Source of the DNA: Ginglymostoma cirratum
Taxonomy: Eukaryota
Assembly (NCBI GenBank): GCA_024137785.1
Contig: JAHRHZ010000042.1
Coordinates: 23,284,682 to 23,348,681 of the forward strand
Reading direction: 5' to 3'
DNA length: 64,000 nucleotides
Below are positions 5,409 to 63,942 of the stretch, piece by piece. Positions within the stretch are counted from its first letter, which is position 1. Each line of letters begins with the position of its first letter. Under the pieces are notes generated by a model. The model was not told where the DNA came from, did no database searches, and saw only the letters and a list, made by a program, of their open reading frames with translations. The translations under genes and the position numbers were made by a program.

Positions 5409-5516
5409 CATCTCTTGTTATTCAGCAATTAATGAAGCAGCTCAGTGTGTTTAGAATCAAAATGAATGCAGCAACAACCATGGATCACCCAATAAAAATT
5501 CACAACCATGTGTCAC
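5409..5516 (-). pseudogene. Copy A transmembrane exon
   Basis: tttctttcAG acceptor; reads (G)DTWL*IFIG*SMVVAAFILILNTLSCFINC*ITRD with 3 TGA stops. Clear nucleotide homolog at 27469-27576. 3' end uncertain because the donor is non-canonical. Confidence 0.8.
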
Positions 5517-6271
5517 CTGAAAGAAACTTGCGAAATTTGGATGTGGCTTTTTTAAAATAAGTACCTTTGGTCGGATCAAATGGTAAAGATTCTTTCGAAG
5601 TTATTTCATAGTCGGCAAAAATACAACCATCATGACCCATTTCATAACTTTTAAGAGGAGTGGAGCATTTAATTTTCTTCCCTTGGTCCTTTTAAATTTC
5701 TGGAGATAATGGCTCAACGTGAACTGAAAAAGTAACAGCATTTGAACAAGACACAGTATTATTAATGTACAAGTTGGCCGACCGAATCGATCATACATAA
5801 CATTCCATATCAACTGCAAATATCCACAGACTGAAGACCCCATTCCCTTGTTATCTTTAGAAAAGTTGAAACTCATCCTTCACCTCCCACCATCTTCATG
5901 AGGATGCTCCAACTGCACGTTAAGTATCAAGTTACTTTCTGACAGAGACGGTCTTTTGTAATTGACATCATAATTGCACTCTGTTCACCAGGTCAACAAT
6001 TAGAAAAAGACACTCAATCTATCTTGTGCATGACATTGACAATTAAGTGTGGATTCGTTTTCCTTCAGATGGTCAATTAATGTTGAAGATGTTAAACGTC
6101 AAGTTTTAAACAGTAAATCATTTTCTTCCCCTCATTGCTTAAGAAGAGACTCCTTTTCCTTATAAATATTCTAGAAAATCTAACAGACATTTCACTGAAA
6201 CCTACTCACAATTAATTCTGCTGTTACAGTTTTTGAGAGCTTTACACATTCATGGGAACACATAGACATAC

Positions 6272-6592
6272 CTTTTTGAACAGCTATCAAACAAACACTT
6301 GCATTTTTCCAATCATAACTATTGTTTGCCAGACACCAATAGATACCTGCATCTTCAGATTGGAAATTAATTTTACTTAATTTTAAGATGCTTAATCCAA
6401 CTGCTATTTGTACCATCTCAGTGCAGTTTTCCCTGTCCTTCAGCCAGATCACAGAGGTGACAGGGTCACTATATGCAGAGCATCTCAATTCCAGGAATGA
6501 ATTTGTGTGGACAGTGATGGAGCTACTGTTCCCTGGATGGTAAATGGCACTGCTGTTTGACCAGTACATTATTGTGAGAAACTGGGGACCAT
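6272..6592 (-). pseudogene. Copy A I/C2-set Ig exon (open frame)
   Basis: acttttAG|AT...AAAG|GTATGT, 321 nt, phase 1-1. YGPQ...LELRCSAYSDPVTSVIWLK...EDAGIYWCLANNSY. Confidence 0.9.
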
Positions 6593-7208
6593 CTAAAAGT
6601 AAAACAGAATAAAAGATTTTGGGTGACAGAGTTGGGACTATGATTATGTTTAGAATGATTGTAAACAAAATTAATTGCACAGAAAATAAGCAATTAAAAT
6701 TAACTACATTTATATGAATATAGTATCGGCAGATTACTGCAGGATGATATTCTATACATCAATACAATTGCTTATACACAAAACTTGACTAAATTGTCAA
6801 AGTGCGTAATCTTGCATATGAGTAAGTTTGAAAAGCCTGGAAGAAGTTACTCAAATACTAATTGTAAGGTAAGGACAAGCTTTGACATTAAAAGCTTAAA
6901 GTTTGTGTTAGTAAGAAAAGGTTTTTGCAATGTTGCACAATGTGGAGGTACTTCCAGAGATTGAGTTAGACCAGGAAACAACATAACAGAGTTTAATTCC
7001 AAATGGAATCTATGTACAAAAGAGAGTGTCTACAAAATGTCATATCTTCAGTTTAAAAGAAAACTGAATGATGCTTTTAGAATTACATTGGATGCACTGG
7101 TGCAGTAAATTCCAGAGAGACCTAAACCAACCACTGGTGAAGATGTGATTGATTTCTTTATCAATGATTTTTGCTGCTTTGATAAAAGTTAGTCAGCAGA
7201 CTGGATAA

Positions 7209-7306
7209 CTGAGATAACAAGGTGTAGGGCTGGATGAACACAGCAGGCCAAGCAGCATCAGAGGAGCAGGAAGGCTGACGTTTCGGGCCTAGACCCTTCT
7301 TCAGAA
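7209..7306. mobile_element. Short Penelope-derived non-autonomous element with hammerhead core
   Basis: Flanked by the direct repeat ACTGGATAACT. Minus strand 7275-7304 reads CTGAAGA-AGGGTCTAGGCCC-GAAA-CGTC. Confidence 0.8.
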
Positions 7307-7724
7307 ACTGGATAACTAATTGCTTCTACTCAAATGGAGCAAAGTCACTTGAAAAATGCACTTCAACGAGCGGGAGTAACTATGTTGAACAGAGAGGGCA
7401 ACTCCAGCAATGTAGCCCATTCTCAATATTGTTAGCAATTTTAGTCCGGATTACAGGGAGAGCATTTTTCTTAGCTATTGATGTTATCCATTTCTGAAAA
7501 TAGCAATATTGTTGAGGAGAATGCTCACACAACATCGAGTTTGATCTTTGTATTCAAGTTCAGTCTGGATTAGAATTCATTTCTTGGTGTGAAGTTCAAA
7601 ATCCCAATTTTCTTGTGAGGAGGTGAAAGTGCTGCTCTTTCAAATGGAACTTCCACAAACATTAACCTCAAACCAAAGAGGAATTGCAATTGAAAATAAT
7701 AATAGCATTGGGGTTAATACTCGC

Positions 7725-8020
7725 ACATAGCTTGTTGTCTGATCTTATTTGTTACTGGTTGTTTGAAAGTCATATAATTTATCTGACACAAACAGTCAGT
7801 TCCATGTTCTGTCACTTGGGGAATGATCTCAAATTCATTGGTAACAATAGGCTTACCATTAACCATTCCTTTCAAAGTTGGTACACTGATATTTGTGGTT
7901 ATGTTTGTTCCATTACGGGTAACACAGATGTTCTCAGACTGCAACCCTTGGACAGACCAGGTCAGGACAGACTTTTGTCCAGCAATCAAACCACCATCCA
8001 CATTGGAAATTTCAAGGATC
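7725..8020 (-). pseudogene. Copy A C1-type Ig exon (degenerate)
   Basis: LIAGQKSVLTWSVQGLQSENI...EIIPQVTEHGTDCLCQI aligns to the C1 exons of copies B and C. First Cys is now Trp, the core Trp is lost, and the donor reads GCGAGT. 5' boundary uncertain. Confidence 0.8.
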
Positions 8021-8919
8021 CTGATAAAGCGGGAAATCATCATTAATGTAATTGTGAACTTTTAAAATATACAAACCATTGAACACAATGGCAAAATACT
8101 AGAGATTTTTAGTGCTAGTATTCTGAAAGTGTACTCCGTTTCATGTCACAACAACACCTCAGACTGGTTCATGAATTGTGTGCTTGTACAACTCCTTCAG
8201 CCCCCTTTAACTTTTCAAGTTGCACAATTCAAAAATAAATTGCATCATGGCTTTAGTCTTAACTATGATCAGATGTTAGTTTATGACACAACTGTTGCTG
8301 AAAATTCATTAAATCACCAGAAGGTGAGTGTTGTTGTATAAAATACAGATACAAAGATGAAAAATAGTTAGATGTAACAGACGTTTCTAAACATGAAAGT
8401 GAAAGATGATAAGTCTGGTAATGCTTTCACGCTGTTACTTGCTTGACAATTCTTAGGTTGAAAGCTGGATGCCAGAAATCAGCAGCTGCTCTGAAAAAGT
8501 TGGAGATTTTTTCCAGAGGGGTAACTGAGTGGAACAGATTCTGGGAAGGAAGTAGTGAGGTCTCCCTTGTTTTATTTTGTCATGCCACTGCACTGTATTG
8601 ATTCACACCTTTAACTTCTTTCCCTTGCTTTATCTCATTGTTGTGTAATCTGTCCCTGATAGTATCTCTCAGAATTCTTCTCGAAGTTTTGTGATAAGGG
8701 AATTTCGCAGCCTGTTTTATGGCAACCAAAGCAAAATGGCAGCTTTGTGAATTTTGAAAAAAAGTATTGTTCCATGACAAACAGAAACTGGTTAATTAAA
8801 CTGGAATTTCTTGTGTTGTCCTTCCAGTCTGCTGTTCTGAAAAGCTTACAATTCCCACTATTTGGTAGGATTCATTGATCTAAATAATTCTGACACAAGA
8901 CATCAGTCTGTCTGCTTTG

Positions 8920-9137
8920 TGTGGAGCTAGAGGAACACAGCAGGCCAGGAAGCTTCAGAGGAGCAGTAAAGTTGTCGTTTCAGGTCGAGACCCTTCTTCA
9001 CTCATTTCTGAAGAAGGTTCCCAACCTGAAACAACAACTTTCCTGCGCCTCTGATGCTGCCTCGCCTGCTGTGTTCGTCCAGCTCCGCACTGTGTTGTCT
9101 CTGACTCCAGCATCTGCAGTTCTTGCCATCTCTCGTT
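8920..9137. mobile_element. Penelope-derived inverted-repeat short element
   Basis: Fold-back of the gaacacagcaggcc...gaggagc unit; TSD TGTCTGCTTTG. Confidence 0.8.
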
Positions 9138-15173: not shown

Positions 15174-15518
15174 CAGAAAGCTGTATCCTTGTTCCTTGCC
15201 CTCTTCTCTCCAATAGAGGGCAGACACTCAGTAGTCTTGCCACACAGATATTATAATTAGAATGATGAAAGGAAACATTTTCTATCTCCAGTGATGTGAC
15301 GCAGTGTCTGAAACCACCCAGAGTAACATCAGGAATACAAGTCAGCTTCTTCATTTCATAGGAGGTATAAATCATCCGTGGTGATTCCTAGTACCAGGAT
15401 ATACACACTCAGTCAGTGTCTGTTCCATTATAAATCCATGCACAGTTTATTGAGACTGACTCTCCTCTCAAGACACTGAGCAGACGCGGTTAAGTCACTT
15501 CTCCAACGAACTGGTGAC
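15174..15518 (-). pseudogene. Copy A VJ-type V-set exon with 3 in-frame stops
   Basis: ctgtcAG|GT...TCTG|GTAAAG, 345 nt. (G)HQFVGEVT*PRLLSVLRGESVSINCAW...TD*VCISWY*ESPR...LTCIPDVTLGGFRHCVTSLEIENVS...ICVARLLSVCPLLERRGQGTRIQLS. Confidence 0.9.
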
Positions 15519-16178: not shown

Positions 16179-16227
16179 CTGGAACTGCTGTTTGCAAAGT
16201 GAAAAGCAGCTTCAGCAGTAGCTGCAT
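16179..16227 (-). pseudogene. Copy A leader (signal peptide) exon
   Basis: ATG...MQLLLKLLFTLQTAVP(G)|GTGAGA, 49 nt, phase 1, 660 bp upstream of the V exon. Confidence 0.8.
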
Positions 16228-17039: not shown

Positions 17040-18650
17040 ATTGTCTTTGACAACAACAATATGATTGTCCACCTTAGAAATTGTGAGTCAATGGTCACGT
17101 GTTCTGTGGGTCCTTTTGTAACTGATGAGCCTGATCCTGGATTCACATCTCCTCCAGTAAACTCGGCAGGTGTTTCCAAGAGGCGGAATTGGTCCTTGGC
17201 CTTGAGATCATTGGGATTCCTTTCTCTGGTTTTACCTCATCTTGCCAACAGGTGTTCTCAACAAACTGTGTTCCTTCATGTAGGAGCATCTTCTAAGTTA
17301 GTTTCTTCTGAACAGGGTGTCCCATATAATGACATCTATCTTGCATTTCTTGAGGAAAACCTTCAGGGCGTCTTCGAAACACTCCCTTTGTCCTTCTCTT
17401 GTTCAAGCACCTTTCTTCAGCTGGGAAAAGAAGATTTGCTTTGACAGTCGGACATCAAGCGTCCTAAGCACATAGTTGGCCCAGTGGAGTTGGTTTCAGA
17501 TGACTATGGCCTTGATGCTGGTGCTATTACCTGCTTCAAAGATGCTGATGTTAGATCCTCTGTCCTCGCAACTGATGTGGAGGATCCAACCCAAACAATG
17601 TTGATGGTAGTTCTGAATGAATTGAGTTGGTGACTTTTGTTAGTCTGAGTTTTGGAGCCATGTTAAAGAATTGAAAGGATGACTGTCTTATCTGTAGGGA
17701 GCTTTGTATCGGAATTAGATGTCACTGTCATTGATGGCTCTCATTCTTAGGTGTCCAAAGTTGGTGCTTGTGGACTGTGTGGGAAGGTGAATCTCCTCAT
17801 TGATGTCAGCCTTAGATAAGAGGTATTTCCCAGATAAGGAAAATGGTCAATATTTAGAACAATTTCTCTGTTGTTTTTAATGAAGGAATAAACCAGGACT
17901 TGCCCTGGGATGGTTTGACAAAGGACTTGACTCTTTTTGAGTTTGAGGCTTACATCATTTCTTCAGTGTGATTCCGCAAAGATATTAAGTGAGAATTGGA
18001 GATTCTGTTCCAAGAGAGCAGCGATGATGTCCTCTGCGTACTGAAGTTCTATAGGCAATGTTGGTGTCATGTTCTTCTTGGATTTCAACTAGTTTACGTT
18101 GAAAATAGACAATGTCCACATCACTAGCAACCTTGTTCTTGACAATGTGAAGAATGGTGTTAATGAAGATGGAAAAATGGTGACGGTAAGGACACATCCC
18201 TGTTTGTCTTCTGTATTGACCTCACAGGATTGTGTCATATTACCATCGCTAAGTGTCATCACTGATGTCTTGTCAGGAAGGAGGAGGACATTGATGAATA
18301 TCATTGGACTGCTGGCTTTGACAGAGTCTTTCATTGTACTTCCCAATTGACTGAGTCAAAAGCCTTGGTCAGATCCATAAAGGTCACGTAGAGTGGTCGG
18401 TGTTGTTCCTTGTTTCTCTTGGAATTGACGCGTGTCCATAGTTCCACAGCTTGGTCAGAAGCCACACTACCTTTCCAGAAGGATTTCCTCAGAGAGTGAG
18501 AGAAGGTGTCTAGCAATGATTTGGATGATGATCTTCCCAATGATGGAAAATAGGGAAAGTTTTCAATATTTTGCATAGTCCATTTTGTCTCCTTTCTTGA
18601 AGATGGTGGAGGCAGCTTCCCTGAGATTGGCAAGATGATGAATTACTATT
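17040..18650 (-). mobile_element. RTE-clade LINE, degenerate RT and C-terminus
   Basis: LYVTFMDLTKAFDSVN and DKQGCVL RT motifs on the minus strand, with frameshifts. Confidence 0.8.
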
Positions 18651-24808: not shown

Positions 24809-24827
24809 CAGAATCTGATCTGCTCAG

Positions 24828-25129
24828 TTCAACGAGGGGACCTGGTATTTCCATTGTGGATGGTGCTTTGGTTACTGGATGTAAGTCTATGCTGACCTGC
24901 CCTGACCAGGGAGTGTACTCTGAGAATATCTCCTTTAATTGGATCTATGTTTGAGCAAACATCATCAGAAACATCACTTCCCCATCCTTTACTGTTAATG
25001 GCAAATCAGTTGCCAACAGCAAACTTGAGATTATCCCTCAAGTAACCCACCATAGCACTGTCTGTGCATTTCAAAAAAAAAGTGACTTTCAAACAACTAA
25101 CAATATGTGAGATCAAACGACATGCTATG
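24828..25129 (+). pseudogene. Copy B C1-type exon
   Basis: GISIVDGALVTGCKSMLTCPDQGVYSENISFNWIYV*...SKLEIIPQVTHHST. One stop plus a frameshift in the poly-A run. Confidence 0.85.
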
Positions 25130-26137
25130 TGTCACAATTGTCCTCCACACTATTGCTGTTTTCAGGAATGGCTAACAGAAAATGATCCGAGTGAGATAAA
25201 CGATTTCTGTTTTTCTGTGGTTTATGACTGTGTAAACTTTCTTTAATTAGTGGCACAAGAAAGTTAAGACCTCACACTAAAACATGAACTCATAGTCCAG
25301 ACTGAACTTGCGCATAATGCTGAGAATGATCTACATTGCTGGGGATGCCCTCCAGGTTTAAACACGATTCCGTCTGCTGGTTCAGGAGCATTTTGAAAAT
25401 GACTTGGCTCCATTTGAGAATAAGTTACGAGTTATCCAGTGTGCTGATTAATTGATAAAGAAATTAACCATTTGTTCACCTAATGATTAATTTGAATTAT
25501 CCCTGGTAGCTGAATTCACTACATTAGTTCAAACAATGGTAATTTCCGAAGGCATAATTCATTATTCATTTAAGTTGAAGATATGACATTTTGAAAACAC
25601 TTCCTTTCACATGTATATTTTGCCTGGAATCAAGCTCATCATAATGTCCCCTGATCTAACTCAATCTCTGGAAACACCTTCAAATTGTGCAACATTGCAG
25701 GCTTTTTCTTCTTCTTCACATGATCTTTGAGCCTTTAAAACCAAAGTTGGGCTTTCCCTGACAACTAGCATCTGAGGAATTTTTGGAGGCTTTTCAAAGT
25801 GCTTTACATACTAGACTAGGGATTTTGACCATTCAAATAAGAGCAAAATATTGCAGATGATCGAAATCTAATATAAAGGCAGAAAGTGCTGAAGACACAC
25901 AGCAGATGTGGCAGAATCTGTGGAGAGAGAGACAGAGTTAATGTTTCAAGTCTAGTATAACTACTCTTCAGAACTGAGGGGACCATTCAATCAGATTTTG
26001 CAAATCGAAAGTGTTGATACATAATATATATTCCTGATGTTAATTTGCCAATGTTAAATCCATATAACTGCAGTAAACTCTGATTTTTCATGTGCAAATA
26101 ACATTGCACAAATTCTTTTATTCCATTTTTCTTTTAG

Positions 26138-26415
26138 ATGGTCCATAGTTTCTCACAATAATGTACAGGTTTTATGGCAGCAAAATTTACCTTCCAGTGA
26201 CCGAGAGAATTGAGATGCTCTGTATAGTAACCCTGCCTCTGCTGTGATCTGGCTGAAGGATGGGCAAAACTGTACTGAGATGGTACAAATGGCAGCTGGA
26301 TTAAATGGTTCCAAAGAAAAGGTAAGACAGTTCCACTCTGAAGATGCAGGAGTCCACTGGTGTATGGCAAACCATAGCTATGGTTGGAGAAACACAGTGA
26401 TACAAGTTGAAAAAG
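26138..26415 (+). pseudogene. Copy B I/C2-set exon
   Basis: cttttAG|ATGGTCCATAG (stop), an internal deletion, then VIWLKDGQNCTEMVQMAAGL...EDAGVHWCMANHSYGW...AAAG|GTAAGT. Confidence 0.9.
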
Positions 26416-27468
26416 GTAAGTACAAATTTTAAAACTTTATGAACTTAATGTATAAATTATTAAGGTGACAGTCTATTACCTGGAAAGCAAAAGCCCTCTC
26501 TCCAGCAATTTACTTTGAAAAAGTGTACTACAATTCTAGATGTAATAGGAAAGACTACATCCTAAAACACTAACAACATATCTCTAATTCAAAACATGTT
26601 CATAAAGAGTCATAAACTTGTGATTAGATATTGATTAGATGTGTTTGTACAGATTTCAGTCTTAAAATTGTCTTTAAAACTGGTGAATTTGAGAACAACT
26701 ATCAATGCAATGTATGTTTAAAATACTCTGGAATAAACACAAGTAATCCCTTCTTAATCAGGAACAGGATGAAAAATGATTAAGAATTTAACATTGGACA
26801 TATAAAATCTCCAACAATAATTGACTACAAGAAGGAAAAGAACCCACACTTAAATGTCAATGACTTGTACAAGATAATTCGATTCACAGTTTTTAATAGT
26901 TGGTATTCACAGTGCAATTATGATGTTAATTACAAGAGTAAATTCTGTCACCAATTCAAATGACATTTAATGTATAAATGGGGCAACATCATGAAAATTG
27001 TGGGAAACAAAGGACACATTTCAACTTTTGTAAAGATATCAGGGCAATATTGCAAAAGGGTCATTAATTTTTGGAAATTCACAGTTGAGGGGGAATGTTT
27101 TCTTCAATCTAACCAGTTGGCCAATTTGCATATTAATAACAGAGTGTCTTGTTCGGAAGCTGTTATTTTAGACTGTACTTTGAGGCAATCTTCAGACAAA
27201 TTACAAAGGACACAGGAAGAAAATTAAATTTTTCTCTCATGTTGAGGCTCCAGTAAGTTTTGTTCCTACCCACAATGCAATAAATTAGATTGATCTTTAG
27301 TAGGTCTAAATTATCCAAAGCTTCTTCATTTAAGAATTCTACAGATATTTTCTAATCGACATGTTCAGAAATGACATTGTACACCTCTGGAGTAGGTGAG
27401 ACTTGAACCTAGGTCTCCAACCCCAAATGTAGGGACACTACCACTGATCTTTCACAAATTTCTTTCAA

Positions 27469-27576
27469 GTAACACTTGGTTCTGGACTTTCATTGTGTGA
27501 ACTATTACAGTTGCCGCATTCTTTTGGATTCTAACCACATTGAGCTGATCAGTTCAATGCTGAATAATGGGTAATG
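27469..27576 (+). pseudogene. Copy B transmembrane exon
   Basis: Acceptor mutated to tttctttcAA. (G)NTWFWTFIV*TITVAAFFWILTTLS*SVQC*IMG, colinear with the copy A TM exon. Confidence 0.8.
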
Positions 27577-40773: not shown

Positions 40774-42448
<1,675 letters not shown>

Positions 42449-53900: not shown

Positions 53901-56900
53901 GTATTAAATGTTAATAAGTAACCTTGAACTCCCACATGGGTTATGTGTAAGCAATCCAATGTGTTTAAGTTAAATGTGGATGTTGACAGTTTGGACCTGG
54001 CTTACGCATGCATTGTTTCTGGTTTATAGCTTCACCTGTACCCAAAACCACCTGCTCTTCCAGGTTTCAAAAAAAATGTCCTGTGTATTCATGCTGTCCT
54101 TTTTTTTTGTGTTTTTTTATTCCATTCTGTCAACATGATTTTCTTGGAAATATAGGTGTGTGAGATCAGGTCTCACGTAATATTTAGCAGATGAGACACT
54201 TTAATCCCACTGGGCATCCTACCTGTGGATATGGAGGCTGTGGGGGTGTGGGTGTGGCTAAGCAACTTTATAGTGTTCAAACATTGTCTGACCTAAAACG
54301 TAACCCGTTCTTTACAATGTTAAAACCTTTAGTTCTCTCAGGGCAGTGACTTGAAATGAATTCAGGGATTTATATGTCCACCAATTAAGAAGTTGCTCGA
54401 AAAGTTTAGCAGGTCTGGCAGCATCTGTGAAGAAAAAAATCAGAGTTAATGTTTCGGGGCCGGTGACTGAGGAAGTGTGTCGGGGTGTACATCGTCATGT
54501 TACCATACATCACGAACTTATCTGAACTGACCACAAAACTCCTACAGCCACTGGGCATGAGAGTGGCACACAAACCTACATCAACCCTATGTCAACTGCT
54601 AATAAGAACTAAAGACCCTTTACCCACTACGGACAGAGCCAATGTAATATAAAAGGTTCCATGCAAGGACTGCGACAAAATTACATTGGACTGACAGGAA
54701 GAAAACTGGCTATGGGAACACATGAACACCAACTAGCAACAAAAAGACATGACCAATACTCATTCGTCTCCATTCACAGGGATAAAGAGAACTACCAGTT
54801 CGATCGGGACAACGTTAGGATCCTAGGACAAGCCAAACAGAGACAAGCATGGGAATTTCTAGAGGTCTGATTCTCCACCAAGGCAATCAATAAACACATA
54901 GAATTAGACCTTATATACACACCACTGCAAAGAAAAACTGGAAATGAGGTAATATACTCCAAAGGACCCCAGAGTTTAAAAAACAGGTGGGAAAACACAA
55001 CAACACTTCATCGGAGGCTACACTGATGATGTTACCCAGCAGGGTAATGGAACGTCTGCAAACTAACAAACCAGCTCGGTGAGAGATCCAACCACAGCAT
55101 CCAAAACCCGAGCTATAAATCTACTCAAAAACATTCTGTGGTCAATCCTTTACATATCACTCACTAAGTTCATTGGTGGTCTTAAGCATGGACATACTGG
55201 CTAACATCCTCAAAACATGAACACAAAGATGTTTCCAAACTTCCCATGAGTCTGCAGTAGTACCGGCAGTGTGCAGGCACAGCTATAAGGAAAGCAAATG
55301 GAATTTTGGCATTTATTGCTTAAGCAATAGAGTGTGAAAGGAGCAAACTGTTGGTACAACTGCACAAGGCATTAGTGAGACTGCACTTGAAGTAATGTTA
55401 CAATCTTAGTCCCCTTAATTGAAGAGGGATGCAGTTGATGTGGGGATGGAGGCAGTTCAAAGGAGGTACACTAGATTGACTCCAGAGATGAGAAGAGAGA
55501 TTAAGTAGTTTAGACATATTGTCTCCAGAATTTAGAAGAATGAGAGGCGATCTAATAGACATATATAAGATGCTAAAGGGGTATGACAAAGTAGATGTAG
55601 CAAGTCTGTTTCCTGATGGAGAACTTTAGAATGAAATCACAGTTTTAGGATAAGGGGTGGCTGATGTAGCACAGAGATGAGAAGAGATTACTTCTCTCAA
55701 AGGGTCATGAATCTGTGGAATTCCCAGTTTGTGGTTGATGTAGAGACATTCAGTCAATTTAAAGAGGAGATTGATAGATATTTGATTATTAATGGGCTGA
55801 AGGGTTATGGAAAGCGGGCAGGAAAGTAAAGGCCAAGATGAAATCAGCTGCGATCGTATTAAATGAAGGAAAGGTTCAAGGTACTGAATTGCCTGTTCCT
55901 GCTCCCAAGTTCTTAAATTCTTGAGTTTCAGTTAAGGAGCTGAGAATCTTTAAAATAGTCTTTGCACCTGGCTAGAGTTGTCCTCCAACTCAGGTAAGCT
56001 CCAAAAGGACAATAATTACTGACTGCGGCTGATTCATTTCTTCCTTCAATTTGTTGGGGAATTAGATTCTTGACTTTATGTAACACCCTAACATCTCTTC
56101 TCTTTTAACATAAAAGTAGTAACGTAAGTGTATATTAACACTGAAATAGGAGTAGGCCATTCAGCCTTTTGAAACTCTATGTTAGCATATTCAGTCATAG
56201 CTGAACCTCAGCTTTACTCCACGTTTTTGCCTTTTCTCCTCATAATTTGATATCTTTATCTAACCAAAGTCTAAAAATAGGGATCAACAATACCTCAATC
56301 TATCATCAGCGTTAACATTTAAACAAACTTTTGCAACATCACAATTTATGATTAACATCTGTGGCAATTTACCACTCCAAATATTATATTTAAAATGTTG
56401 CAACGTACAACTTAAACCTTTAGAAGGGTTATAAGGCTCAGCTTAAAGAAAATATGGAAGTAGATCACTCAGCTAATGCAGAATCAGTAAGGTAACAATA
56501 TATATACTTTGGTCTTGAAATTTTAAAAGATCTGCTGCTCTAATTGTGCATAAACTTCAGAGATCAATGTAAGTATTTGAGAAAATCGACATGTATTCCT
56601 TTCTCTTTGGAATTCCAACAGTGTCCAATCAGAGATAAAGCAGGAAACTTGGACAACACTTGGAATTGTATGGAAATTGTGGGTCTTTATGTGCCTAAAA
56701 CTCAAACGTAATTACTTAATAAAGTTCATATCTTATGAAATAATTGTTGGTTTCATAAAAAAAGACACTATTTTGAAATCACACTGTGTGACATTGTTTT
56801 TTTTAGCATTCTAATTCTGTAAAAGCAATTATTTGAAACTCCCTGGTTACTTTATGTATGCATATATGTATGTTTCTATTTTATCTATTTAATTAAATTG

Positions 56901-59900
56901 TTCATTTCTCACTGTTAAAGTTTATGTGATCATAGTTTCCATTGCATTTGAGATGGTTAGATATAAACTCAAGTGTCTATTGTTAACGTTTTATCATTTT
57001 TAGTATCTCCCTCTTGCAGTGGTCAGTTTCTTAGATATTTTAAAATATCGTGTAGGGCAATGTGGTTGAGTTTTAATGGCCACTAAAACGCCAGTGCATG
57101 CACTCAGTTGAGTCAAGCTGCTACGTAAAAATGGCACTGTGGGTGTATTTACACTCCATGGATTGCAGATGTTCAAAAAGGCAGCAATTTTTTTCGAGAT
57201 AGACAGTAATACTGACCTTTTATATTATGTTCAAATTTTTTAAAAAAAGTCAGTGTCTCAAATGCCAGGTTCTCGGGCTTACTGATTTCATTCTTAGGTG
57301 TTGGATTGGTCAGTAGATTGACTTTAAAGACAGACTATCTGGGACAAATTGCACATGGACCTTGTTTCTATTTGGAAACTCCAGGTGTATTCCCCGCATT
57401 CTGGATAACCTCATGTGCAGGAATTGCCGCCAGTTGTTTGAGCTCAAGCCACAATCGACATGTGATAAGTGACTGGAGTCACTGCAATGCAGTTGAGAAT
57501 CAAAGACTGAGTACTTGACGGATGTGGTGACCTCCGAAGACAATGCATGGTAACAAAATGAGGGGATGGGAAAGGCACAGGCAGTATAGAAATTCACCAT
57601 GGCAATAGACTTACAAACTAGATTATTGTTTTGGGTAAGTGCAGACAGTCAGGTCTCCTTGAAGAAATGCAGCAATAATCAAAAACCAACCAGATAGAAA
57701 ATTGCTAGAACACCAGAAAAATCAGAAGGATTTGAAATGCAACAGTCATGTGTGGGTCAATAATTAGGACCACAGCAACCGCAAGTGTGGCTCCCAGATA
57801 TTGCCTGTCTACTGTCAGGCAAATGGTAAATGCTGTAACTTCCTTCATTATTGGGTCACTACATTCTTTACAGCAAAAAGGTAAACATGTTCAGCATGCA
57901 CTGGTTAGACCGAAGGGTATGTTTCTGTGCTCTACGACTCTATGACTGTATGTCAATTATAACCATAGATAAACAGATAATAAAAATTATCCATTATTTG
58001 TCGGTCAGTCTGATTGGGTCTAAGATTACTGATAATTGGTATATTTTGTTCCATTAGGTAATCCAGTGGTTGGGGAGGTGTCTCAGCCAAGTCTGGTCAA
58101 CATCCTGAGAGGAAAGCCAGCCACATTAAACTGCACATTTAATTACATTGCAAATGACAGTAATTGGATCTACATATTCTGGTACAAGACCTCACAGGGG
58201 ATTACTGAGAGAATAACCAGAGAATATTCAGAGAATAATCTGACCTGCATCCCTGACATTGCTCCACACACTTTTAGCCACTGTGCTGCAACTCTGACGA
58301 TCAAAAATGTTTCTTTTAGAATGTCTGATTCAAATTATACATGTGTGGTGAAGGTACCAACTATCTACCCACCAATTGAGGAAAAAGGACCAGGAACACA
58401 ATTGCATGTTGATGGTAAAGTGCATATTCTATTATAAATGTTTGCATATATGGTATTACTACTTTTTTTAAAAAGCATCAGAAATTTAAAATTAATGTAA
58501 TATCATGTCCTTTGATTTCATTAATGACTTGCTGAAACAATGAACAGGATTTTGCATTTTAGTATCCCAGTGTTGAGGTCAAATTGAGGTTCCAACCCTT
58601 CACTCTATCAGTGCGGTCACATTGTCATGATTTTTGGCCAGACATTGTGCATCCTGCCAAATTAAAGCTGGTGGGATAGGCCCGCAAAGCTGGAAAGTCA
58701 ACAAGACTTTCTCCAACAGTCCACTGTTGCAGGTGAAGGAGAGAGACGGTGCCTCCATCTTTAGATATTTTCCGCGCACTTTTGAAACATGAGAAGTAAA
58801 ATATAGTTCTGACTGTCAGGCCACCACTGTGAAAGGGGGACCCACAATACAGGGTGACCTGCAGCCATGGCTGTGATTGAGTAGGCCGGGAGAACCTGTA
58901 GCCTATTACACCAGCCACCATGTCTGCCACCTGGAAATCACCTTCAGGAAGTTGGATTGCTCTGGAAATTCCAGTTAGCCATTGAAAATTGGCCTCAAAT
59001 GACTTTCCATTTACTTGAATTGGCTATGAGTCACTTGTGGCCTGATGGTCGGATGATATTGGTAAACTGGCATGCATTGGTGTGGAAACATGTAGTCACT
59101 CACTGCCTCCAGACTTCTCACCCAATTGGACAGAAAACTGAGTCTCATGTAAGTGCAATTACATGCAAGATAATTAGTTAAAGAAGTAAGATTGAATTGA
59201 TTAATTGAGAATCCTCACTGGGAGACTGCAAAATTTGCTTTTGGATATTGTGTAATAACTTAGCTGCAATAGCTCAAATTAGGCTTCTTATTTTCAAATA
59301 TGTATCATGCTGGCATACTATAATTCAATATTTTCCATTCTAATTCATACTTTTTTTATCTCACTCATGTATAATATTACAACTTAACTTAAGATCTTGC
59401 AAAAAAATCCATTTCTTAGATGATTCATTCCTTGTACATGCAGTCTCTTACATAAGGTGTTTTCCACAAGTCCCACACAATTTCTGGAACCTATTGGCAT
59501 CTTTAAACAACAATGTAATCATAACCCATCATAACAATATAAAAAGAATATATACTGCAGATTTATTATGTTAACAGTGGTCCATGACATAGGAAGAGGT
59601 GAGTTCCACTTTGAAATGCAATTGAACGGTTTGGGCTTAAAGATGTAACATTCTGAAGTTCCCATTGAAAACAATGTTAGGCTTCATGTAGACGAACATA
59701 TTTTAGACAAAATCTTAAGGATGAAAGACAATTTGTCAAAAAATAGAAAACAACTTTTATATGACTGGCACTCAATGGATTAGGCAATCTTCCAAGACTG
59801 AAATAAAAACTATAAGCTTTGTGTAACCTCTACATGATTCATTTATTGAAATGAAGTTGCCAAGTGTGTAGAACCTGCTTGACATTAGCTTGTTATTGTA

Positions 59901-62900
59901 TTCTTTAGAATTTGCATTCAGCTTGATTTAGTTCACATTTTATGTTCCAGTTCCCCCATCTCCTCCAGCAATTTCTGTTACCCAGGAAATTTTAGTAGCA
60001 GAAAAGGCATCTTCATTGTACTGCCTTGCTGGGGGGTTTTATCCTCAGAATATCTCCATTAAATGGCTGCCAGCCATCCTGGACAATTCTCAATCTTCAA
60101 CAGCGGATGCTGAAACGAGATATATGACTCAAGAGTCCACTTTCAGGAACATTGATGGCACATTTAACACTACTAGTCAATTGACATTTGTTCCCACTTC
60201 ACAAGACCATGGATTAATCTATACTTGTCACATCCATCATTCAACAAGTGAAAAGCAAATGACAAAGCAGATAAGGCTAAATGTGAACTGTAAGTATGTT
60301 GCCTTAATGTATTTTTCTGATGGACTGATGCTTTTAGCCTTTAATTTGTGGCATACTCCTAATGTAAGCCTGAAGGGGCCTAAATGCTGATTGTTTTCCT
60401 GAAGCTTTGCAAGATGATAATGCAATATTAGCCTTGAGTGTACATATGATGACAGGCTGAGTTGGAATGTCCAAGATAACACATTGTTCTTTCAACTTTT
60501 CTATATGGAGTAAAAAATCCATCTCAGATGGTTGGGATGAAGACATTCTGGGCGTAATTGTCTTACATTAATAGGGAATCCCAATGAACCTGGCCTGTAA
60601 ATGGAGTTTTGTTTTTAGCTTATCATTTCACAGTGCAGAAAGAGTTCAACTTTGAATCTGGACATGCATGGCTAGATTTTGGAAATGCCATTTGGTAACT
60701 GGAGTTGCAAAGTCCTTGAAGTAAACTAACTGGACAAACACTGGGCTGCTTTGTAGGAGTAAATTGAAGAGTTCCTTTGAAAACTTGCACAGCTCATATG
60801 GGCCAAATATGTGCCCCAAAATTCTGTAACATTGTAAAATTTGTTCATCGAAGTGATAAATCTGATCTATGCTTACTCCTTCCTAAAGTTAATGGTTTCA
60901 ATACCAATGGATCTATTTTTAAATTGAGGAAAATAATGCTAAAAAGAGAAACAAGGAGACAGTTTTTTCACTATCAAACTTATTAGATAGGTTTCTGAAA
61001 ATATGTAGATTGAGGGAAATATTGAGACGATGAGATTTATCTCCTTAAAATGGTCTTAGGGCTTTGCCCTATTTACAAAACATCTTGTCAAAGACAGACC
61101 AATTTTCTGGGAGAGAATGATGGAACGTAGTTTTACATTGAAAACTTTGCATGCTTTTTATCACAACACCATTCACTGGAGCGATGACGATGATTCTTGT
61201 CAAGAAGGAAGGAAGTAGAAATTCAACAGCTAGTTAACCTTTCGTTCTCTCTTGTACATTTTCAATACTGATTTGAATGTGATCTGGCGAGTGGTTGTCT
61301 GCTTGTCTTTTGCTGAAGAATGAATATGAATAAGATTCCACTTAACAAGCAATTCTTGCACAAGTACTTTGCTTTTAAAGCGTTCCTTGGCCTAATATTT
61401 TACAATACAGAAAGTACACATTTGAGTCCTTTTAATTCCAGTCAGTTTTACTTATTCTATGTCCAGGTTGAATCTACTTCTATGACTAATTATTTCCCGT
61501 TTCCATTGTTCTGATTCAGATGGTCCAAAACTTGTCATATATTACAGGACTTCTGGCACAGATACGTTCCATCAACTGAACCAAGACCGCATCCACGTTA
61601 AGCATCAGACATTTCTTGAACTAAACTGTACAGCGGACAGTAACCCAGCAGCCACAATAATTTGGAGAAAGAAATCCCAGGAAAAAAGCTTGCAATTGAC
61701 AGCTGGAGTAAACGTTTCAATGCTGAAGATTGCAAATATTGAATATTCAGACAGGGGAACGTATCTTTGTGGAGCACAGAATGATTATGGCTTTAAAGAA
61801 CTGCCTGTAAATATATACCTAAAATCTGATTTGAGAAGTAAGTCTCTGCATGAATTCTTGATTCAGAACAAACTGAGATATAAGTAATTAATTATAAACA
61901 GAAATCATTAATTCATTTTTTCCAAAGCCTATTCATTTGCCAAACCGAGATAATGTGATCCTGTAGAATATGGCCCTATAGATAAAATAGGCCAGTGGTC
62001 AATAAGGCCATAAGCAAAACAAGAAAGACAATAGGTAAATGCATAAATTCTTCAATGTTCAATCTTCAATTCTTCAACATATCTATGGGTTTGCCTTCCA
62101 TTCTTAAAGGGTACTGGAAATCTCATCTTTATTCACTTGAATCATCTAACTCTAACCAGTCTGAGGAATATCAATATATGTGTGACCATGCTCCCATCAA
62201 AGAGTCTGTATGCTGTTGAAAAGCTAACCACAAAGAGGAACACCACTTAAGGTCCTAACGTGCAAGTCTATCTATGGAAGCTGGAGGCCCAGGCCAGTTG
62301 GAAAACCAGGCAAATGACATTCAACTTCATGAGAGAATAGGGTAGTGGAGGAGAGGAGCAGAGAAAGAATGGGGCAAAGGAGGGTTAGAAGGGGGAGAGG
62401 AAGGGGAGGGTATTGAGGAGGATGAAGAAGAGGAGGAAGAGGAGGAAGTGGAGGGGTGCGGAGAGGAGGGGAGAGGAGGAGGAGAGGAGAAGGCAGAGGA
62501 AACAGGGAGATGAAGGGGAGGGAGAGGATTCCAAGCAGCAAAGGAAGTTGGAGATTATGGAGGGAGGGATGGGGGAGAGAACAGGAAGGGGTGGAGAAAG
62601 TCAAGGGACGAAGTTAGAGAGGATGAGATGGGGGAGTATGGAGAGAAGGGTGGGAGAAGGAGAAGGGAAAAGGAGGGCTGAGGGTTGGGATGTAGAGAGA
62701 TGAAGGCTACTGAAGGGGTGACCCCCTTTAAGGGTTTCTTGTGCCCATCTGAGGCACATGTCAAAAACCCTTAAACCTTACATACCCTTTTCACCAAGAC
62801 TTGAAAACTTGATGAAACCTCACACTTACTGGAGACACTGGTCCCATTGTCATCCACTCCCTATCGGAATCACTGCAGTGGCCACTGCTGAGCCTGGCAC

Positions 62901-63942
62901 TGCAGGTTGGCTCAGCTGCTGTCATTATCCAATCAGCTGACATCTCTAGAAGTGGAATGTCCTCCCGAATCGGAGCAGCATTCTAATCTGAAGTGAATCC
63001 ATGTTACTCCCTGTTTTAAACAGCACAGAGCAGCAAGCATTTTTGTTGGTGGGCTTGCTCACAACTTTCTCATCAGTGCAGGGGTGTGAGACCTGTTAAA
63101 CTCATCATTTCCTCTGTATTGTTAGAATCAGGCCCATCCAGGCCAAGCAATGACCAAGCCATAAAGCTGGCTTTTAATGTACCTGACCAGCTTCGAATGG
63201 AGTGGTCTTCTAAAGCAATCCATTTTCACTCCAAGTCCCTATGCCCTCTCCAGACCCCTGTCTCTCTTCCACACGTGCCTTCCAAGTGCCCCATAAAATC
63301 CATCCCTTTACATTTTATGGTGTCAACGCTCTGTAAGCTGCTTGTGTCAATCCCTGAAATATCAGTATAAGTAATCCCAGCCGATCACAGTGCATCTTCT
63401 TTCATCATTCTCAAGAGTGTCCTCAAAAACAGAACTTAAATACAAGTTAACATACAAATGTTAAAATACTGGCAAAATAAGGGCAACCGCATATCTCAAT
63501 GCCCAGACTGCGCACTGGAAACATTTGAAAACCACTTTTTGCTCAAAGTAAACAGATGTGTTTGAAACTTTTCCGTCTATTTGAGGTTAAAATAGTATCA
63601 TATTGCTGCTGAGGTTTTTGAGGCTGCCTGAAGCCTTGTAATAAAAATTGAACTGAGATATCATATAAACAACTGAGGGAATTTATTTATCATTGTGAGC
63701 CATGGAATTTAAAACAAAAATGTTTATTTGTTTGAAGCTTCACCTTGTATATTGTCGATTTTATTCCAGTAAATCTGGAACATAATTTAGCTCATATTTA
63801 TCACCAGTCGTTTATGCTGTCTATATGAAACTCAAACTGCTTTTCTTTTCCTTCATAGGTAGTTTTCCAGTTCGATCTGTAACATTTCTAGTCTTTCTCG
63901 TCTCTGTCATTTCATTACTGATCTGGGGCAGTGAATGGAAAG
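44897..63942 (+). CDS. Intact IgSF type I membrane receptor, copy C: L-VJ-C1-I(C2)-TM(Arg). Exons 44897-44954, 58058-58414, 59951-60289, 61520-61837, 63859-63942; may continue beyond the window
   Basis: All five exons are open, with GT/AG boundaries and phase-1 junctions. They join into 385 codons with canonical Cys/Trp in all three Ig domains. Confidence 0.88.
45790..45990. mobile_element. Penelope-derived fold-back element
   Basis: aaacagaaattgctgg...cagcatctgtgg unit and its partial inverse. Confidence 0.7.
46020..46370 (-). mobile_element. Degenerate CR1 3' fragment
   Basis: LYKIM..LDR...LF.LAEVSKTRCH...FFTKSVM motif. Confidence 0.7.
46730..47550 (-). mobile_element. L2/CR1-group LINE remnant with nested Penelope unit (47226-47351)
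   Basis: YKVQIRNLMLYAPFAWMGA motif; nested unit has TSD CTTGTTATGGA. Confidence 0.7.
47830..48050 (+). mobile_element. Solo LTR, same family as 10579-10804
   Basis: ccaggtggacctcat...ctgattggggttgttaa..ccaatcaggga..cctggctgacaGATATAAA...gtaAATAAAgggtgac. Confidence 0.65.
48520..49360 (+). mobile_element. L2/CR1-group LINE remnant with 3' tail
   Basis: TIDKAQVR...PTTLKNLDTILDKA motif; tail gggcaataaatgctg shared with local SINEs. Confidence 0.75.
50775..53000 (-). mobile_element. CR1 LINE, ~2.2 kb including the RT domain
   Basis: VPDDWRVANV..LFKKG, QHGFVQGKSCLTN, VDVVYLDFSKDFDKV.H, SGVPLGSVLG, RRLRGDL.EVYKIM. Confidence 0.95.
54390..55132 (+). mobile_element. Penelope-like element (GIY-YIG endonuclease end and pseudo-LTR), second family
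   Basis: NVI.KVPCKDC..YIGLTGRKLA..HEHQLATKR. Hammerhead-like CTGATGA-TGTTACCCAGCAGGGTAAT-GGAA-CGTC at 55023-55057. Confidence 0.85.
55270..55922 (+). mobile_element. Degenerate CR1 3' portion
   Basis: aaagcaaatggaattttggc...gaatttagaagaatgagaggcgatcta; homologous to 1928-2590. Confidence 0.85.
58058..58414 (+). CDS. Copy C VJ-type V-set Ig exon
   Basis: ccattAG|GT...GATG|GTAAAG, 357 nt. VSQP..ATLNC...IFWYK...ATLTIKNV...YTC...GPGTQLHV, with a J-like G-strand in the same exon. Confidence 0.93.
59951..60289 (+). CDS. Copy C C1-set Ig exon
   Basis: ttccAG|TT...AACT|GTAAGT, 339 nt. LYCLAGGFYPQNISIKW...NIDGTFNTTSQL...YTCHIHH. Confidence 0.93.
61520..61837 (+). CDS. Copy C I/C2-set Ig exon
   Basis: gattcAG|AT...AGAA|GTAAGT, 318 nt. 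YGP...LELNCTADSNPAATIIW...LKIANIEYSDRGTYLCGAQNDYG. Confidence 0.93.
62335..62702. repeat. Purine-rich (GA) low-complexity tract in copy C intron 4
   Basis: ~370 bp made almost entirely of G and A on the plus strand. Confidence 0.9.
63859..63942 (+). CDS. Copy C transmembrane exon
   Basis: Strong polypyrimidine tract ttttcttttccttcatAG; (S)SFPVRSVTFLVFLVSVISLLIWGSEWK(G)|GTAAAT. Without splicing it reads GKFTKS*, stopping at 63960-63962. Confidence 0.8.

What the first reader, a model, noticed from the sequence alone, without database searches (positions are those of the whole stretch)
5409..63942. Candidate undescribed shark family of non-rearranging, antigen-receptor-like VJ-C1-I receptors undergoing birth and death
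Seen: three paralogs share one exon plan (leader / V with in-exon J-like GxGTxLxV / C1-set / I-set / TM). One is intact and two are dead. Established: C1-set domains are largely restricted to Ig, TCR, MHC, beta2m, tapasin, SIRP and B7H6-type proteins. Germline-joined VJ domains typify NKp30, CD28/CTLA-4, TMIGD2, SIRP and NITR. SIRP is VJ-C1-C1, NKp30 and CD28 have a single V, and NITR is V(J)-I. Nectins/CADMs share a V-C-C plan but lack the J-type G-strand and a charged TM. Inference: VJ-C1-I with a TM Arg fits none of these. It may be a cartilaginous-fish innate receptor family resembling the pre-RAG V(J)-C1 precursor of antigen receptors.
Basis: partly seen in the sequence, partly recalled or inferred. 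Interest (0 to 1): 0.9.

Follow-up and report, generated by a model that had tools for sequence, protein, structure and literature searches.

The report
Shark VJ-C1-I paired receptor cluster
The window holds one probably working gene and two dead copies of a little-studied three-domain immune-type receptor family. The family runs from sharks and rays to sturgeons and gars and sits in public databases under misleading automatic names such as "Siglec" or "MAG-like".

Summary
The Ig exons are real. Copy C (+, 57.6-63.9 kb) has open V(J), C1-set, I-set and Arg-containing TM exons. All four are phase 1-1 with AG/GT sites. Its leader is weak and its tail exons lie beyond the window.

Copy A (-) has all five exons but is dead: stops, a lost Cys and Trp, and a frameshift. 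Copy B (+) is a 5'-truncated dead duplicate of A, without leader or V.

The family is not shark-only. The same plan, V(J)-C1-I-TM(Arg), occurs in rays, paddlefish, sturgeon, bowfin and gar. RefSeq calls these proteins Siglec-8/10/11/12/13/14, MAG-like, sialoadhesin-like, SIRP-alpha-like or syg-2-like.

There are three lineages:
- an ancient Arg-TM lineage, which includes copy C;
- an inhibitory lineage with ITSM/ITIM tails (TIYAVV, VSYADI, SEYSVV);
- tail-less Arg-TM partners of the inhibitory lineage, which include copies A and B.

It therefore looks like a paired inhibitory/activating receptor family. In V-C1 sequence it is closest to SIRP, UrIg2 and Ig light chains. In three-domain shape it is closest to Siglec, nectin and CADM. 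It fails the defining tests of each.

No paper describing it was found. RNA support is one contig.

The parts
57599..57647 (+). Copy C candidate leader exon (MAIDLQTRLLFWVSAD + 1 nt). It is homologous in position and in the LLF core to the copy A leader. The weak donor ACA|GTCAGG is the only one in phase with the V exon.
   Evidence: The Pristiophorus model P0001 begins MSTS|G at the equivalent place.
58058..58414 (+). Copy C V(J) exon, 357 nt. It has the canonical Cys/Trp/YxC, an extra Cys pair (LTC...SHC), an IYPP FG loop and an in-exon GPGTQLHV.
59951..60289 (+). Copy C C1-set exon, 339 nt (GFYPQNISIKW, DGTF, YTCHIHH).
61520..61837 (+). Copy C I-set exon, 318 nt.
   Evidence: An X1 contig ends its match at the exon boundary.
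63859..63942 (+). Copy C transmembrane exon, 84 nt (SFPVRSVTFLVFLVSVISLLIWGSEWK), with a conserved Arg. The tail exons lie beyond the window.
16179..16227 (-). Copy A leader exon (MQLLLKLLFTLQTAVP+G), intact, donor G|GTGAGA.
15174..15518 (-). Copy A V(J) exon with three in-frame stops.
7725..8020 (-). Copy A C1 exon, 296 nt (out of frame). The B-strand Cys is now Trp, the C-strand Trp is deleted, and the donor is GC.
6272..6592 (-). Copy A I-set exon, 321 nt, still open with AG/GT.
5422..5516 (-). Copy A TM exon, matching the tail-less Arg-TM type of P0072/P0073. It has two premature TGA, one on the Arg codon at 5485-5487. The final TGA is the natural stop.
24837..25164 (+). Copy B C1 exon remnant, with a stop and a frameshift before the F strand ends. 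There is no leader or V upstream.
26109..26414 (+). Copy B I-set exon remnant. The first half is frameshifted with stops; the second half is readable.
27468..27563 (+). Copy B TM exon remnant. It has a TGA on the Arg codon, as in copy A, plus a further stop.

Best explanation
The window carries part of a cluster of a distinct, ancient jawed-vertebrate family of type I membrane receptors. Their ectodomain is V(J)-C1-I: an antigen-receptor-like V domain with a germline-joined J-type G strand, a true C1-set domain, and a membrane-proximal I-set domain.

The family works as a paired-receptor system. An inhibitory lineage carries a cytoplasmic ITSM/ITIM triplet ([T/I]xYAxV, VSYADI, SEYSxV), which I infer recruits SHP-1/2-type phosphatases. 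Two Arg-in-TM lineages have short or no tails, and I infer that they signal through an ITAM adaptor of the FcR-gamma/DAP12/CD3-zeta type.

Copy C is the elasmobranch member of the oldest Arg-TM lineage, which also has orthologues in paddlefish, sturgeon, bowfin and gar. It is probably functional. Copies A and B are pseudogenes of the younger, tail-less Arg-TM partner of the inhibitory lineage. B is a 5'-truncated inverted duplicate of A, made when the gene was already dead or dying.

Shown here: domain types, exon structure, family membership, distribution, tail motifs, the conserved Arg, and the pseudogene lesions. Inferred: adaptor coupling, phosphatase recruitment, leukocyte expression and the ligand.
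For: - Exons and phases.
- Domain calls: (V-set, C1-set 1.4e-12, I-set).
- The V exon aligns end to end with Ig kappa V-J, including fGPGTKLEI.
- The C1 exon's best solved relatives are UrIg2, Ig CH, IgNAR C, B7-H6 and SIRP. Its model (pLDDT 82.5) matches MHC-II beta2, IgNAR C, beta2m and UrIg2.
- Family members: a phmmer search with the V exon over 1.84 billion proteins gave only elasmobranch and paddlefish relatives at E below 1e-4. A profile search added 14 more elasmobranch species. A search with P0092 added sturgeon, bowfin and gar.
- The TM Arg aligns across sharks, a ray and four bony fishes.
- The ITIM/ITSM motifs are conserved in 16 inhibitory members.
- The TM of copies A and B matches the tail-less Arg-TM proteins P0072/P0073, with TGA on the Arg codon.
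- Domain trees place copy C in the Arg-TM clade (97-98 SH-aLRT). They place copy A's C1 with the orectolobiform inhibitory genes (99).
- Exons of A and B are no better conserved than their introns (67-76% against 70-74%). Copy C has short end branches in the C1 and I trees (0.075-0.08, against 0.32-0.43 for copy A).
- The nearest outside family by full-length search is SIRP-alpha/beta: 28% identity over V+C1, with GFYPQNISIKW against GFFPQNISLKW and GPGTRLHV against GPGTRLFV.
Against: - No direct evidence of expression in leukocytes. Two raw RNA-seq runs gave no exon reads. Only one contig of a run guessed to be RNA ends at the I-exon boundary in the way a spliced transcript would.
- Copy C's leader is weak, and RefSeq models of its closest orthologues lack a signal peptide.
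- The elasmobranch Arg-TM tails end in a conserved [S/T]-x-[L/F] sequence and have juxtamembrane cysteines. That is more typical of adhesion molecules than of DAP12-type partners.
- Whole-ectodomain fold and language-model neighbours are MAG/CD22/nectin/CADM, not SIRP.
- No inhibitory member lies in this window.
Confidence: 0.68

Rival explanations
1. The family is a true (co-)orthologue of SIRP. Cartilaginous and basal ray-finned fish would have SIRPs in which the third C1 domain was replaced by, or preceded by, an I-set domain.
For: SIRP-alpha/beta are the best non-family hits of the full-length search. The V+C1 alignment runs over 238 residues and includes the J motif and GF(Y/F)PQNIS(I/L)KW. 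RefSeq names the paddlefish and sturgeon members 'SIRP-alpha-like'. Both families pair ITIM tails with basic-TM partners and use YADI/L- and SEY-type motifs.
Against: The third domain is I-set, not C1. The V domain carries an extra Cys pair that the SIRPs compared lack. Identity is only 28%. The V-C1 profile scores UrIg2 and Ig light chains as high as SIRP. SIRPs fall outside the family on long branches in all three domain trees.
Confidence: 0.15
2. The genes are divergent Siglecs (MAG, sialoadhesin or CD33-related), as the RefSeq names say, and bind sialic acid.
For: Automatic names. The profile aligns D2-D3 with MAG and Siglec-8. The three-domain model's best Foldseek hits are MAG Ig1-3 and CD22 d1-3. 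The distal SEYSxV motif resembles the Siglec ITIM-like motif.
Against: The V domain has the ordinary B-F disulfide (LNC...YTC), not the Siglec B-E arrangement. The F strand has no Arg at the sialic-acid-binding position, and the domain has a J-type G strand. There is no Ig_CD22 Pfam hit, whereas a trout Siglec-like protein has one. D2 is C1-set. The V part of the three-domain model has low confidence.
Confidence: 0.05
3. The Arg-TM lineage that includes copy C is a nectin/CADM/CRTAM-like adhesion molecule rather than an ITAM-coupled immunoreceptor.
For: The V - C1-like - I/C2 three-domain plan matches nectin/Necl. Pfam C2-set_2 is the second-best call for D2. Nectin-4 and nectin-1 D2 are among the best geometric matches (TM-score 0.68-0.71). 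Necl-4, nectin-1/3 and CADM1/3 are structural neighbours. The C-terminus is a conserved [S/T]-x-[L/F] in elasmobranchs.
Against: No nectin or CADM appears in any sequence search. The family has a J-type G strand and a conserved TM Arg. It includes an ITIM/ITSM lineage. The bony-fish tails lack the C-terminal motif.
Confidence: 0.1
4. Copy C is itself no longer a working gene (leaderless or silent), so the window holds three relics.
For: The leader is weak and the only in-frame donor is poor. The strong donors (TGG|GTAAGT, CAG|GT) are out of phase. RefSeq models in Hemiscyllium and Chiloscyllium start at internal Met codons. There were no exon reads in two RNA-seq runs.
Against: Four exons (1098 nt) are open with perfect phases and splice sites. 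Identity to Hemiscylliidae is 82-88% in C1 and 75-83% in the I domain, with short end branches, unlike copy A. The lineage is conserved from sharks to gar. One contig is consistent with I-to-TM splicing. The same phase-1 leader junction is used in the Pristiophorus model.
Confidence: 0.2

Closest known systems
SIRP family (SIRP-alpha/beta/gamma)
   Same: A germline-joined V(J) domain followed by a C1-set domain. ITIM-bearing inhibitory members are paired with short-tailed members that have a basic TM residue. SIRP is the best non-family sequence hit.
   Different: The third domain is I-set, not C1. The V domain has an extra Cys pair, plus a YPP FG loop in elasmobranchs. The TM residue is Arg rather than Lys. 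Orthology and CD47 binding are untested.
Siglecs / MAG (the RefSeq names)
   Same: A V domain followed by C-type and I/C2-type domains. D2-D3 align with MAG and Siglec-8. The tails carry proximal and distal ITIM-like motifs.
   Different: The V domain has an ordinary B-F disulfide and no F-strand Arg. It has a J-type G strand and D2 is C1-set.
Nectin / Necl (CADM) / PVR family
   Same: A three-domain V - C1-like - C2/I ectodomain with a similar overall predicted shape.
   Different: There is no sequence-level hit. This family has a J motif, a charged TM and an ITIM/ITSM lineage, and lacks an afadin- or FERM-binding type of tail.
UrIg / UrIg2 (shark non-rearranging antigen-receptor-like genes; PMC12227049)
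   Same: A single-exon VJ domain followed by C1. UrIg2 is the top solved-structure hit of the C1 exon and aligns over V+C1 with the family profile.
   Different: UrIg and UrIg2 have three or more C1 domains and no I-set domain. They are reported as homodimeric and antibody-like, and as MHC- or AgRC-linked. Here there is one C1 plus an I-set domain, and the family has paired signalling forms.
PRARP (chicken non-rearranging IgSF genes; Fu et al. 2019, cited in PMC10751288)
   Same: A non-rearranging VJ gene discussed as a remnant of the antigen-receptor precursor.
   Different: It could not be compared here because no sequence or full text was available. From memory only, PRARPs have two domains.
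CD28/CTLA-4 family (PMC11599192)
   Same: The FG loop has a YPP/PxP motif followed by GxG. CTLA-4 and PD-1 clusters are among the nearest language-model neighbours of the V exon.
   Different: By the paper's definition, CD28-family members have a single V domain. YPP is absent from the bony-fish orthologues. There is no stalk-Cys or YxxM-type tail.

Membership tests
SIRP | N-terminal V-set domain with a germline-joined J-like G strand | tested here: met
   GPGTQLHV lies inside the V exon. It aligns with VL-J and with SIRP GPGTRLFV.
SIRP | Second domain C1-set | tested here: met
   Pfam C1-set 1.4e-12. PDB hits. Fold neighbours are MHC-II beta2, IgNAR C and beta2m.
SIRP | Third domain C1-set | tested here: not met
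   Pfam I-set/Ig_3. The best solved relatives are titin, DSCAM and contactin I-set domains.
SIRP | Orthology (synteny with the SIRP locus) and CD47 binding | not testable with these tools
Siglec | V-set domain with a B-E intrasheet disulfide and an F-strand Arg for sialic acid | tested here: not met
   The V alignment shows a canonical B-strand Cys and F-strand Y-x-C, and no Arg at that place. There is no Ig_CD22 hit, unlike trout P0079.
Siglec | C2-set domains after the V domain | tested here: not met
   D2 scores higher as C1-set than as C2-set_2 and has the GFYP...W / DGTF / C.V.H hallmarks. D3 is I-set.
Nectin/Necl/PVR | V - C1-like - C2 ectodomain | tested here: met
   The architecture and predicted fold are similar.
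Nectin/Necl/PVR | Sequence relationship to nectin/Necl V and C domains; uncharged TM | tested here: not met
   No nectin or CADM appears. The TM Arg is conserved.
UrIg/UrIg2 | VJ exon followed by three or more C1 domains | tested here: not met
   There is one C1 and then an I-set domain. The UrIg description is from PMC12227049.
CD28/CTLA-4 family | Single extracellular V domain | tested here: not met
   There are three Ig domains. The definition is from PMC11599192.
Rearranging antigen receptors (Ig/TCR) | V and J split by recombination signal sequences | tested here: not met
   V and J are contiguous in one exon. There is no heptamer-spacer-nonamer in the window.
Paired inhibitory/activating IgSF receptors (functional class) | Closely related ectodomains joined either to ITIM tails or to a charged-TM short tail | tested here: met
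   The inhibitory clade against P0072/P0073, which share lineage-specific ectodomains with it. Arg is conserved in the TM. Only the Arg-TM forms occur in this window.

The most novel reading that the evidence does not exclude
The family is an unrecognised crown-gnathostome lineage of V(J)-C1 receptors. It would be sister to SIRP, or branch near the Ig/TCR-UrIg V-C1 module, and survive only in elasmobranchs and non-teleost ray-finned fishes. That would make it a further relic of the non-rearranging V(J)-C1 precursor of antigen receptors, here fitted with an I-set stalk and paired signalling forms.
Probability: 0.15. Interest if true: 0.8.

Novelty: new variant of a known kind. Interest (0 to 1): 0.55.

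Why it matters
Non-rearranging V(J)-C1 genes (SIRP, UrIg/UrIg2, PRARP, NKp30-type VJ) are the main material for reconstructing how antigen receptors arose. This work defines another such family with a new architecture, V(J)-C1-I.

The family predates the split of cartilaginous and bony fishes, so it is at least as old as crown gnathostomes. It has inhibitory and Arg-TM forms. It was not detected in teleosts or tetrapods with the searches that could be run.

The result also corrects a systematic mis-annotation. About 20 species carry these genes as "Siglec-8/10/11/12/13/14", "MAG-like", "sialoadhesin-like", "SIRP-alpha-like", "syg-2-like" or "HMCN2". Those names would mislead any survey of Siglec or SIRP evolution in fishes.

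The window itself is a modest example of receptor-cluster turnover: one retained gene, plus a dead gene that was duplicated after, or around the time of, its inactivation.

Tried and rejected
- Rfam scan of the window: nothing.
- RSS search: none. The single heptamers are at the chance level.
- RNA. Raw RNA runs X5 and X6 gave no reads on any exon. Their only signal was a repeat at 57.89-57.95 kb. There were no joints. The TM exon lay outside the 6,000 letters laid, so the probable I-to-TM splice in an X1 contig could not be confirmed.
That also rules out dN/dS.
- Three-domain AlphaFold model of orthologue P0001. The V domain had pLDDT of only about 40-65, so no conclusion was drawn from the V part of the fold search.
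- Latimeria H3A3C8 (P0076) looked like a sarcopterygian member (E 2e-32). It is V-C1-C1 without a J motif or I-set domain and falls outside the family in the trees. Rejected as a member.
- The reptile pIgR-like and titin-like proteins and the cyprinid hit from the V search are unrelated multi-V proteins.
- I first read copies A and B as members of the inhibitory clade whose tail exons had been lost. Their TM exon matches the tail-less Arg-TM proteins P0072/P0073, and the last TGA is the natural stop.
- A spliced copy C protein was deliberately not built or searched. Exons were searched one at a time by reference, and full-length work used the orthologous database proteins.
- The Dornburg & Yoder 2022 review and the PRARP paper are not in the library.
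Full report
**1. What is in the window**

A six-frame and HMM survey finds three sets of Ig-superfamily exons and nothing else of the kind.

Copy C lies on the + strand. Its exons are:
- V: 58058-58414
- C1: 59951-60289
- I: 61520-61837
- TM: 63859-63942

Each exon is open, a multiple of three in length, bounded by AG and GT, and in phase 1 at both ends. Pfam calls them V-set (1.8e-7), C1-set (1.4e-12, ahead of CD80-like C2-set_2 at 3.7e-8) and I-set/Ig_3 (about 1e-10).

The V exon ends with GPGTQLHV. It aligns end to end with Ig kappa V-J regions, including fGPGTKLEI. There is no heptamer-spacer-nonamer in the window, so the V domain is germline-joined. The TM exon encodes SFPVRSVTFLVFLVSVISLLIWGSEWK.

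Two caveats apply to calling copy C "intact":
- The leader is weak. The only leader homologous to those of the family starts at ATG 57599. Its strong donors are out of phase with the V exon. Only the weak donor ACA|GTCAGG at 57647 keeps the frame, and it gives a short signal-like peptide, MAIDLQTRLLFWVSA|DS.
- The gene runs off the window. Orthologues have about 40 more residues after the TM exon.

I did not build or search a spliced copy C protein. Exons were searched one at a time, and full-length analyses used database orthologues.

**2. Copies A and B**

Copy A is on the - strand and has all five parts.
- Leader 16179-16227 is intact and reads MQLLLKLLFTLQTAVP+G.
- V 15174-15518 has three in-frame stops.
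- C1 7725-8020 is 296 nt, so it is out of frame. The B-strand Cys is replaced by Trp, the C-strand Trp is deleted, and the donor is GC.
- I 6272-6592 is still open.
- TM 5422-5516 has two premature TGA.

Copy B is on the + strand. It is colinear with A, introns included, from about 600 bp upstream of A's C1 exon (B 24611, about 230 bp upstream of B's own C1 exon) through the TM exon, at roughly 70% DNA identity. No leader or V exon was found for B by protein, HMM or DNA comparison. Its C1, I and TM exons carry stops and frameshifts.

Exons of A and B are no better conserved than their introns (67-76% against 70-74%). Both carry TGA on the same TM codon. Both have a C1 exon that starts one base out of phase with a phase-1 V donor; that last reading is tentative. 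The simplest reading is that an already dead or dying gene was duplicated in inverted orientation. A parallel CGA-to-TGA change at a CpG site cannot be excluded.

**3. The family**

A phmmer search with the copy C V exon over 1.84 billion representative proteins returned 52 hits. Only a handful are true relatives:
- six full or partial elasmobranch proteins (E 2e-38 to 2e-20);
- two truncated models of the copy C orthologue (97% and 71% identity);
- two paddlefish proteins.

A profile search added inhibitory-type members from 14 more sharks and rays. A search with the paddlefish protein added beluga sturgeon, Chinese sturgeon, bowfin and spotted gar.

The sources name these proteins as follows:
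- sialic acid-binding Ig-like lectin 8, 10, 11, 12, 13 or 14
- myelin-associated glycoprotein-like
- sialoadhesin-like
- synaptogenesis protein syg-2-like
- tyrosine-protein phosphatase non-receptor type substrate 1-like
- HMCN2

So the genes are annotated, but not under a meaningful name.

Alignment and domain trees give three lineages.
- (1) An Arg-TM lineage: copy C; Pristiophorus, Hemiscyllium, Chiloscyllium and Scyliorhinus; the stingray Hemitrygon; and the four bony fishes. It has a classical C1 domain (GFYPQNISIKW, DGTF, C.V.H), a conserved Arg near the outer end of the TM, and a short tail.
- (2) An inhibitory lineage with an uncharged TM and a long tail. The tail carries [T/I]xYAxV, V[S/P]YADI and SEYSxV, conserved in 16 proteins.
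- (3) Tail-less Arg-TM proteins (Heptranchias P0072, Pristiophorus P0073). Their ectodomains group with the inhibitory genes of their own lineage (97 SH-aLRT for the Heptranchias pair).

The TM exons of copies A and B match lineage 3 residue for residue. The TGA at 5485-5487 sits on its Arg codon, and the last TGA is the natural stop. The ectodomain exons of copy A group with the orectolobiform inhibitory genes (99 for C1). That is the usual picture for paired receptors that exchange or recently shared ectodomain exons.

**4. What it is most like**

By sequence, the V-C1 module is antigen-receptor-like.
- The V exon's best solved relatives are Ig light-chain and TCR-alpha V domains.
- The C1 exon's best are UrIg2, Ig CH3, IgA, IgNAR C, B7-H6 and SIRP-alpha/gamma.
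- The family profile aligns over V+C1 with UrIg2 (75 bits), Ig light chains (60-68 bits) and SIRP (65-68 bits).

In the full-length search the best non-family hits are pig SIRP-alpha and pangolin SIRP-beta1. Identity is 28% over 238 residues of V+C1, with near-identical GF(Y/F)PQNIS(I/L)KW and GPGTRL.V motifs.

A model of the copy C C1 exon (pLDDT 82.5) has seven strands, including a D-E hairpin. It matches MHC class II beta2, IgNAR C, beta2-microglobulin, IgM C-mu-4 and UrIg2. It also matches the C1-like D2 of SYG-1 and nectins.

The third domain is a plain I-set domain of the titin, DSCAM and contactin kind. Profile stretches over D2-D3 align with MAG and Siglec-8.

At the level of the whole ectodomain the nearest shapes are MAG Ig1-3, CD22 d1-3, Necl-4 and nectin-1 or nectin-3. 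The language-model neighbours are Siglec-like, nectin-3 and CADM clusters. However, the V part of that model has low confidence.

The V domain also has family-specific marks. An extra Cys pair is conserved from sharks to gar. Elasmobranchs have an (I/V)(Y/F)PP FG loop before the GxG; it recalls the CD28 family but is absent from the bony-fish members.

**5. Membership**

The family fails a defining feature of every named family considered.
- SIRP: the third domain is not C1.
- Siglec: the V domain has the ordinary B-F disulfide, no F-strand Arg and a J strand, and D2 is C1.
- Nectin/CADM: no sequence relationship, and the TM is charged.
- UrIg: only one C1.
- CD28 family: not a single V domain (definition in PMC11599192).
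- Rearranging receptors: no RSS.

It does meet the operational definition of a paired inhibitory/activating IgSF receptor family. I therefore file it as a new variant of a known kind. It works like SIRP, but membership in SIRP is not shown.

**6. Mechanism, and what is inferred**

Shown here: architecture, motifs, the conserved Arg, the lineages and the pseudogene lesions.

Inferred from established knowledge of ITIM/ITSM receptors and of Arg/Lys-TM receptors:
- the inhibitory lineage recruits SH2 phosphatases or SAP-type adaptors after tyrosine phosphorylation;
- the Arg-TM lineages need an acidic-TM ITAM adaptor for surface expression and signalling;
- the shared V domain, especially its conserved FG loop, binds a common or related ligand.

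Some facts do not fit neatly. The elasmobranch Arg-TM tails have juxtamembrane cysteines and end in [S/T]-x-[L/F], which suggests additional scaffolding. No inhibitory gene lies in this window.

**7. Expression**

The runs found for this DNA gave little.
- Two raw poly(A)/other RNA runs of the same species label had no reads on any exon.
- One contig of a run guessed to be RNA matches 61682-61840 without a difference, then continues for 99 letters that do not lie on the stretch I laid. The I exon ends at 61837, and the TM exon begins with the same three letters as the intron. This is exactly what an I-to-TM spliced transcript would give.
- The TM exon was outside the 6,000 letters laid, and the same run also holds intronic contigs.

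I count this as weak support only.

**8. Literature**

Searches for UrIg, SIRP, Siglec, non-rearranging VJ genes and innate receptors of sharks, gar and bowfin found no description of a V(J)-C1-I family. The recent UrIg2 paper (PMC12227049), the cartilaginous-fish MHC paper (PMC10751288) and the CD28-family survey (PMC11599192) do not mention it. The library lacks most subscription journals, so this is absence in what could be searched, not proof of novelty.

**9. Limits**

- Teleosts, tetrapods, chimaeras and lobe-finned fishes were covered only by the protein searches above. Gar and bowfin were missed by the V-exon search and appeared only with a closer query, so more distant members may exist.
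- The scan's own notes record many other V(J)-C1 clusters in this genome. I did not use them as evidence.

**10. Verdict**

Three corrections apply: the family is older and wider than sharks, it is already present in annotation under wrong names, and it is a paired-receptor family. Interest is moderate, and novelty is a new variant of a known kind.

Noticed in passing
window 57887-57952: A short repeat in the leader-V intron of copy C is the only part of the laid stretch covered by RNA reads. Depth is about 130 in X1, there are many variants, and the flanks are unlike the window. It is probably an abundant transcribed interspersed element.
   Followed up: no
window 7196-7307, 8919-9134, 21003-21235, 24683-24809, 29477-29628, 35201-35352: A family of roughly 100-200 bp repeats, in both orientations and often as adjacent inverted pairs, at 72-91% identity. 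They are MITE- or SINE-like and are scattered through the introns of copies A and B and the spacer between genes.
   Followed up: partly
window 18334-18633 (-), 51718-52059 (-); also 1946-2489 (+), 41072-41455 (+), 50955-51239 (-), 55519-55829 (+): Decayed retrotransposon pieces. Two ORFs hit Pfam RVT_1 (6.8e-8 and 1.1e-3). The others share a recurring C-terminal ORF motif (LEFRRMRGDLIE...FFTQRVV.LWNSLP) but have no Pfam hit.
   Followed up: partly
window 62272-62760: A purine-rich low-complexity tract (GGA/GAA-type) in the I-to-TM intron of copy C gives long spurious ORFs on both strands. Read laying reported that reads seem cut there.
   Followed up: no
window 41635-42225 (-): A 196-aa ORF with several C..C/H..H-like spacings suggests a decayed C2H2 zinc-finger array. 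It has no Pfam hit at E up to 0.01.
   Followed up: partly
P0062 (Hemiscyllium ocellatum, 610 aa) and P0002 (Heterodontus francisci isoform X5, 418 aa): Architecture varies within the inhibitory lineage. The Hemiscyllium model has two tandem V(J) domains (V-V-C1-I). One Heterodontus isoform skips the I-set domain (V-C1-TM-tail).
   Followed up: no
P0095 (Acipenser sinensis, 336 aa): This gene model appears to fuse two neighbouring family members (C1-I of one paralogue followed by C1 of another). That implies tandem paralogues in sturgeon as well.
   Followed up: no
They therefore lie on the same chromosome-scale record, which is consistent with one cluster.
   Followed up: no
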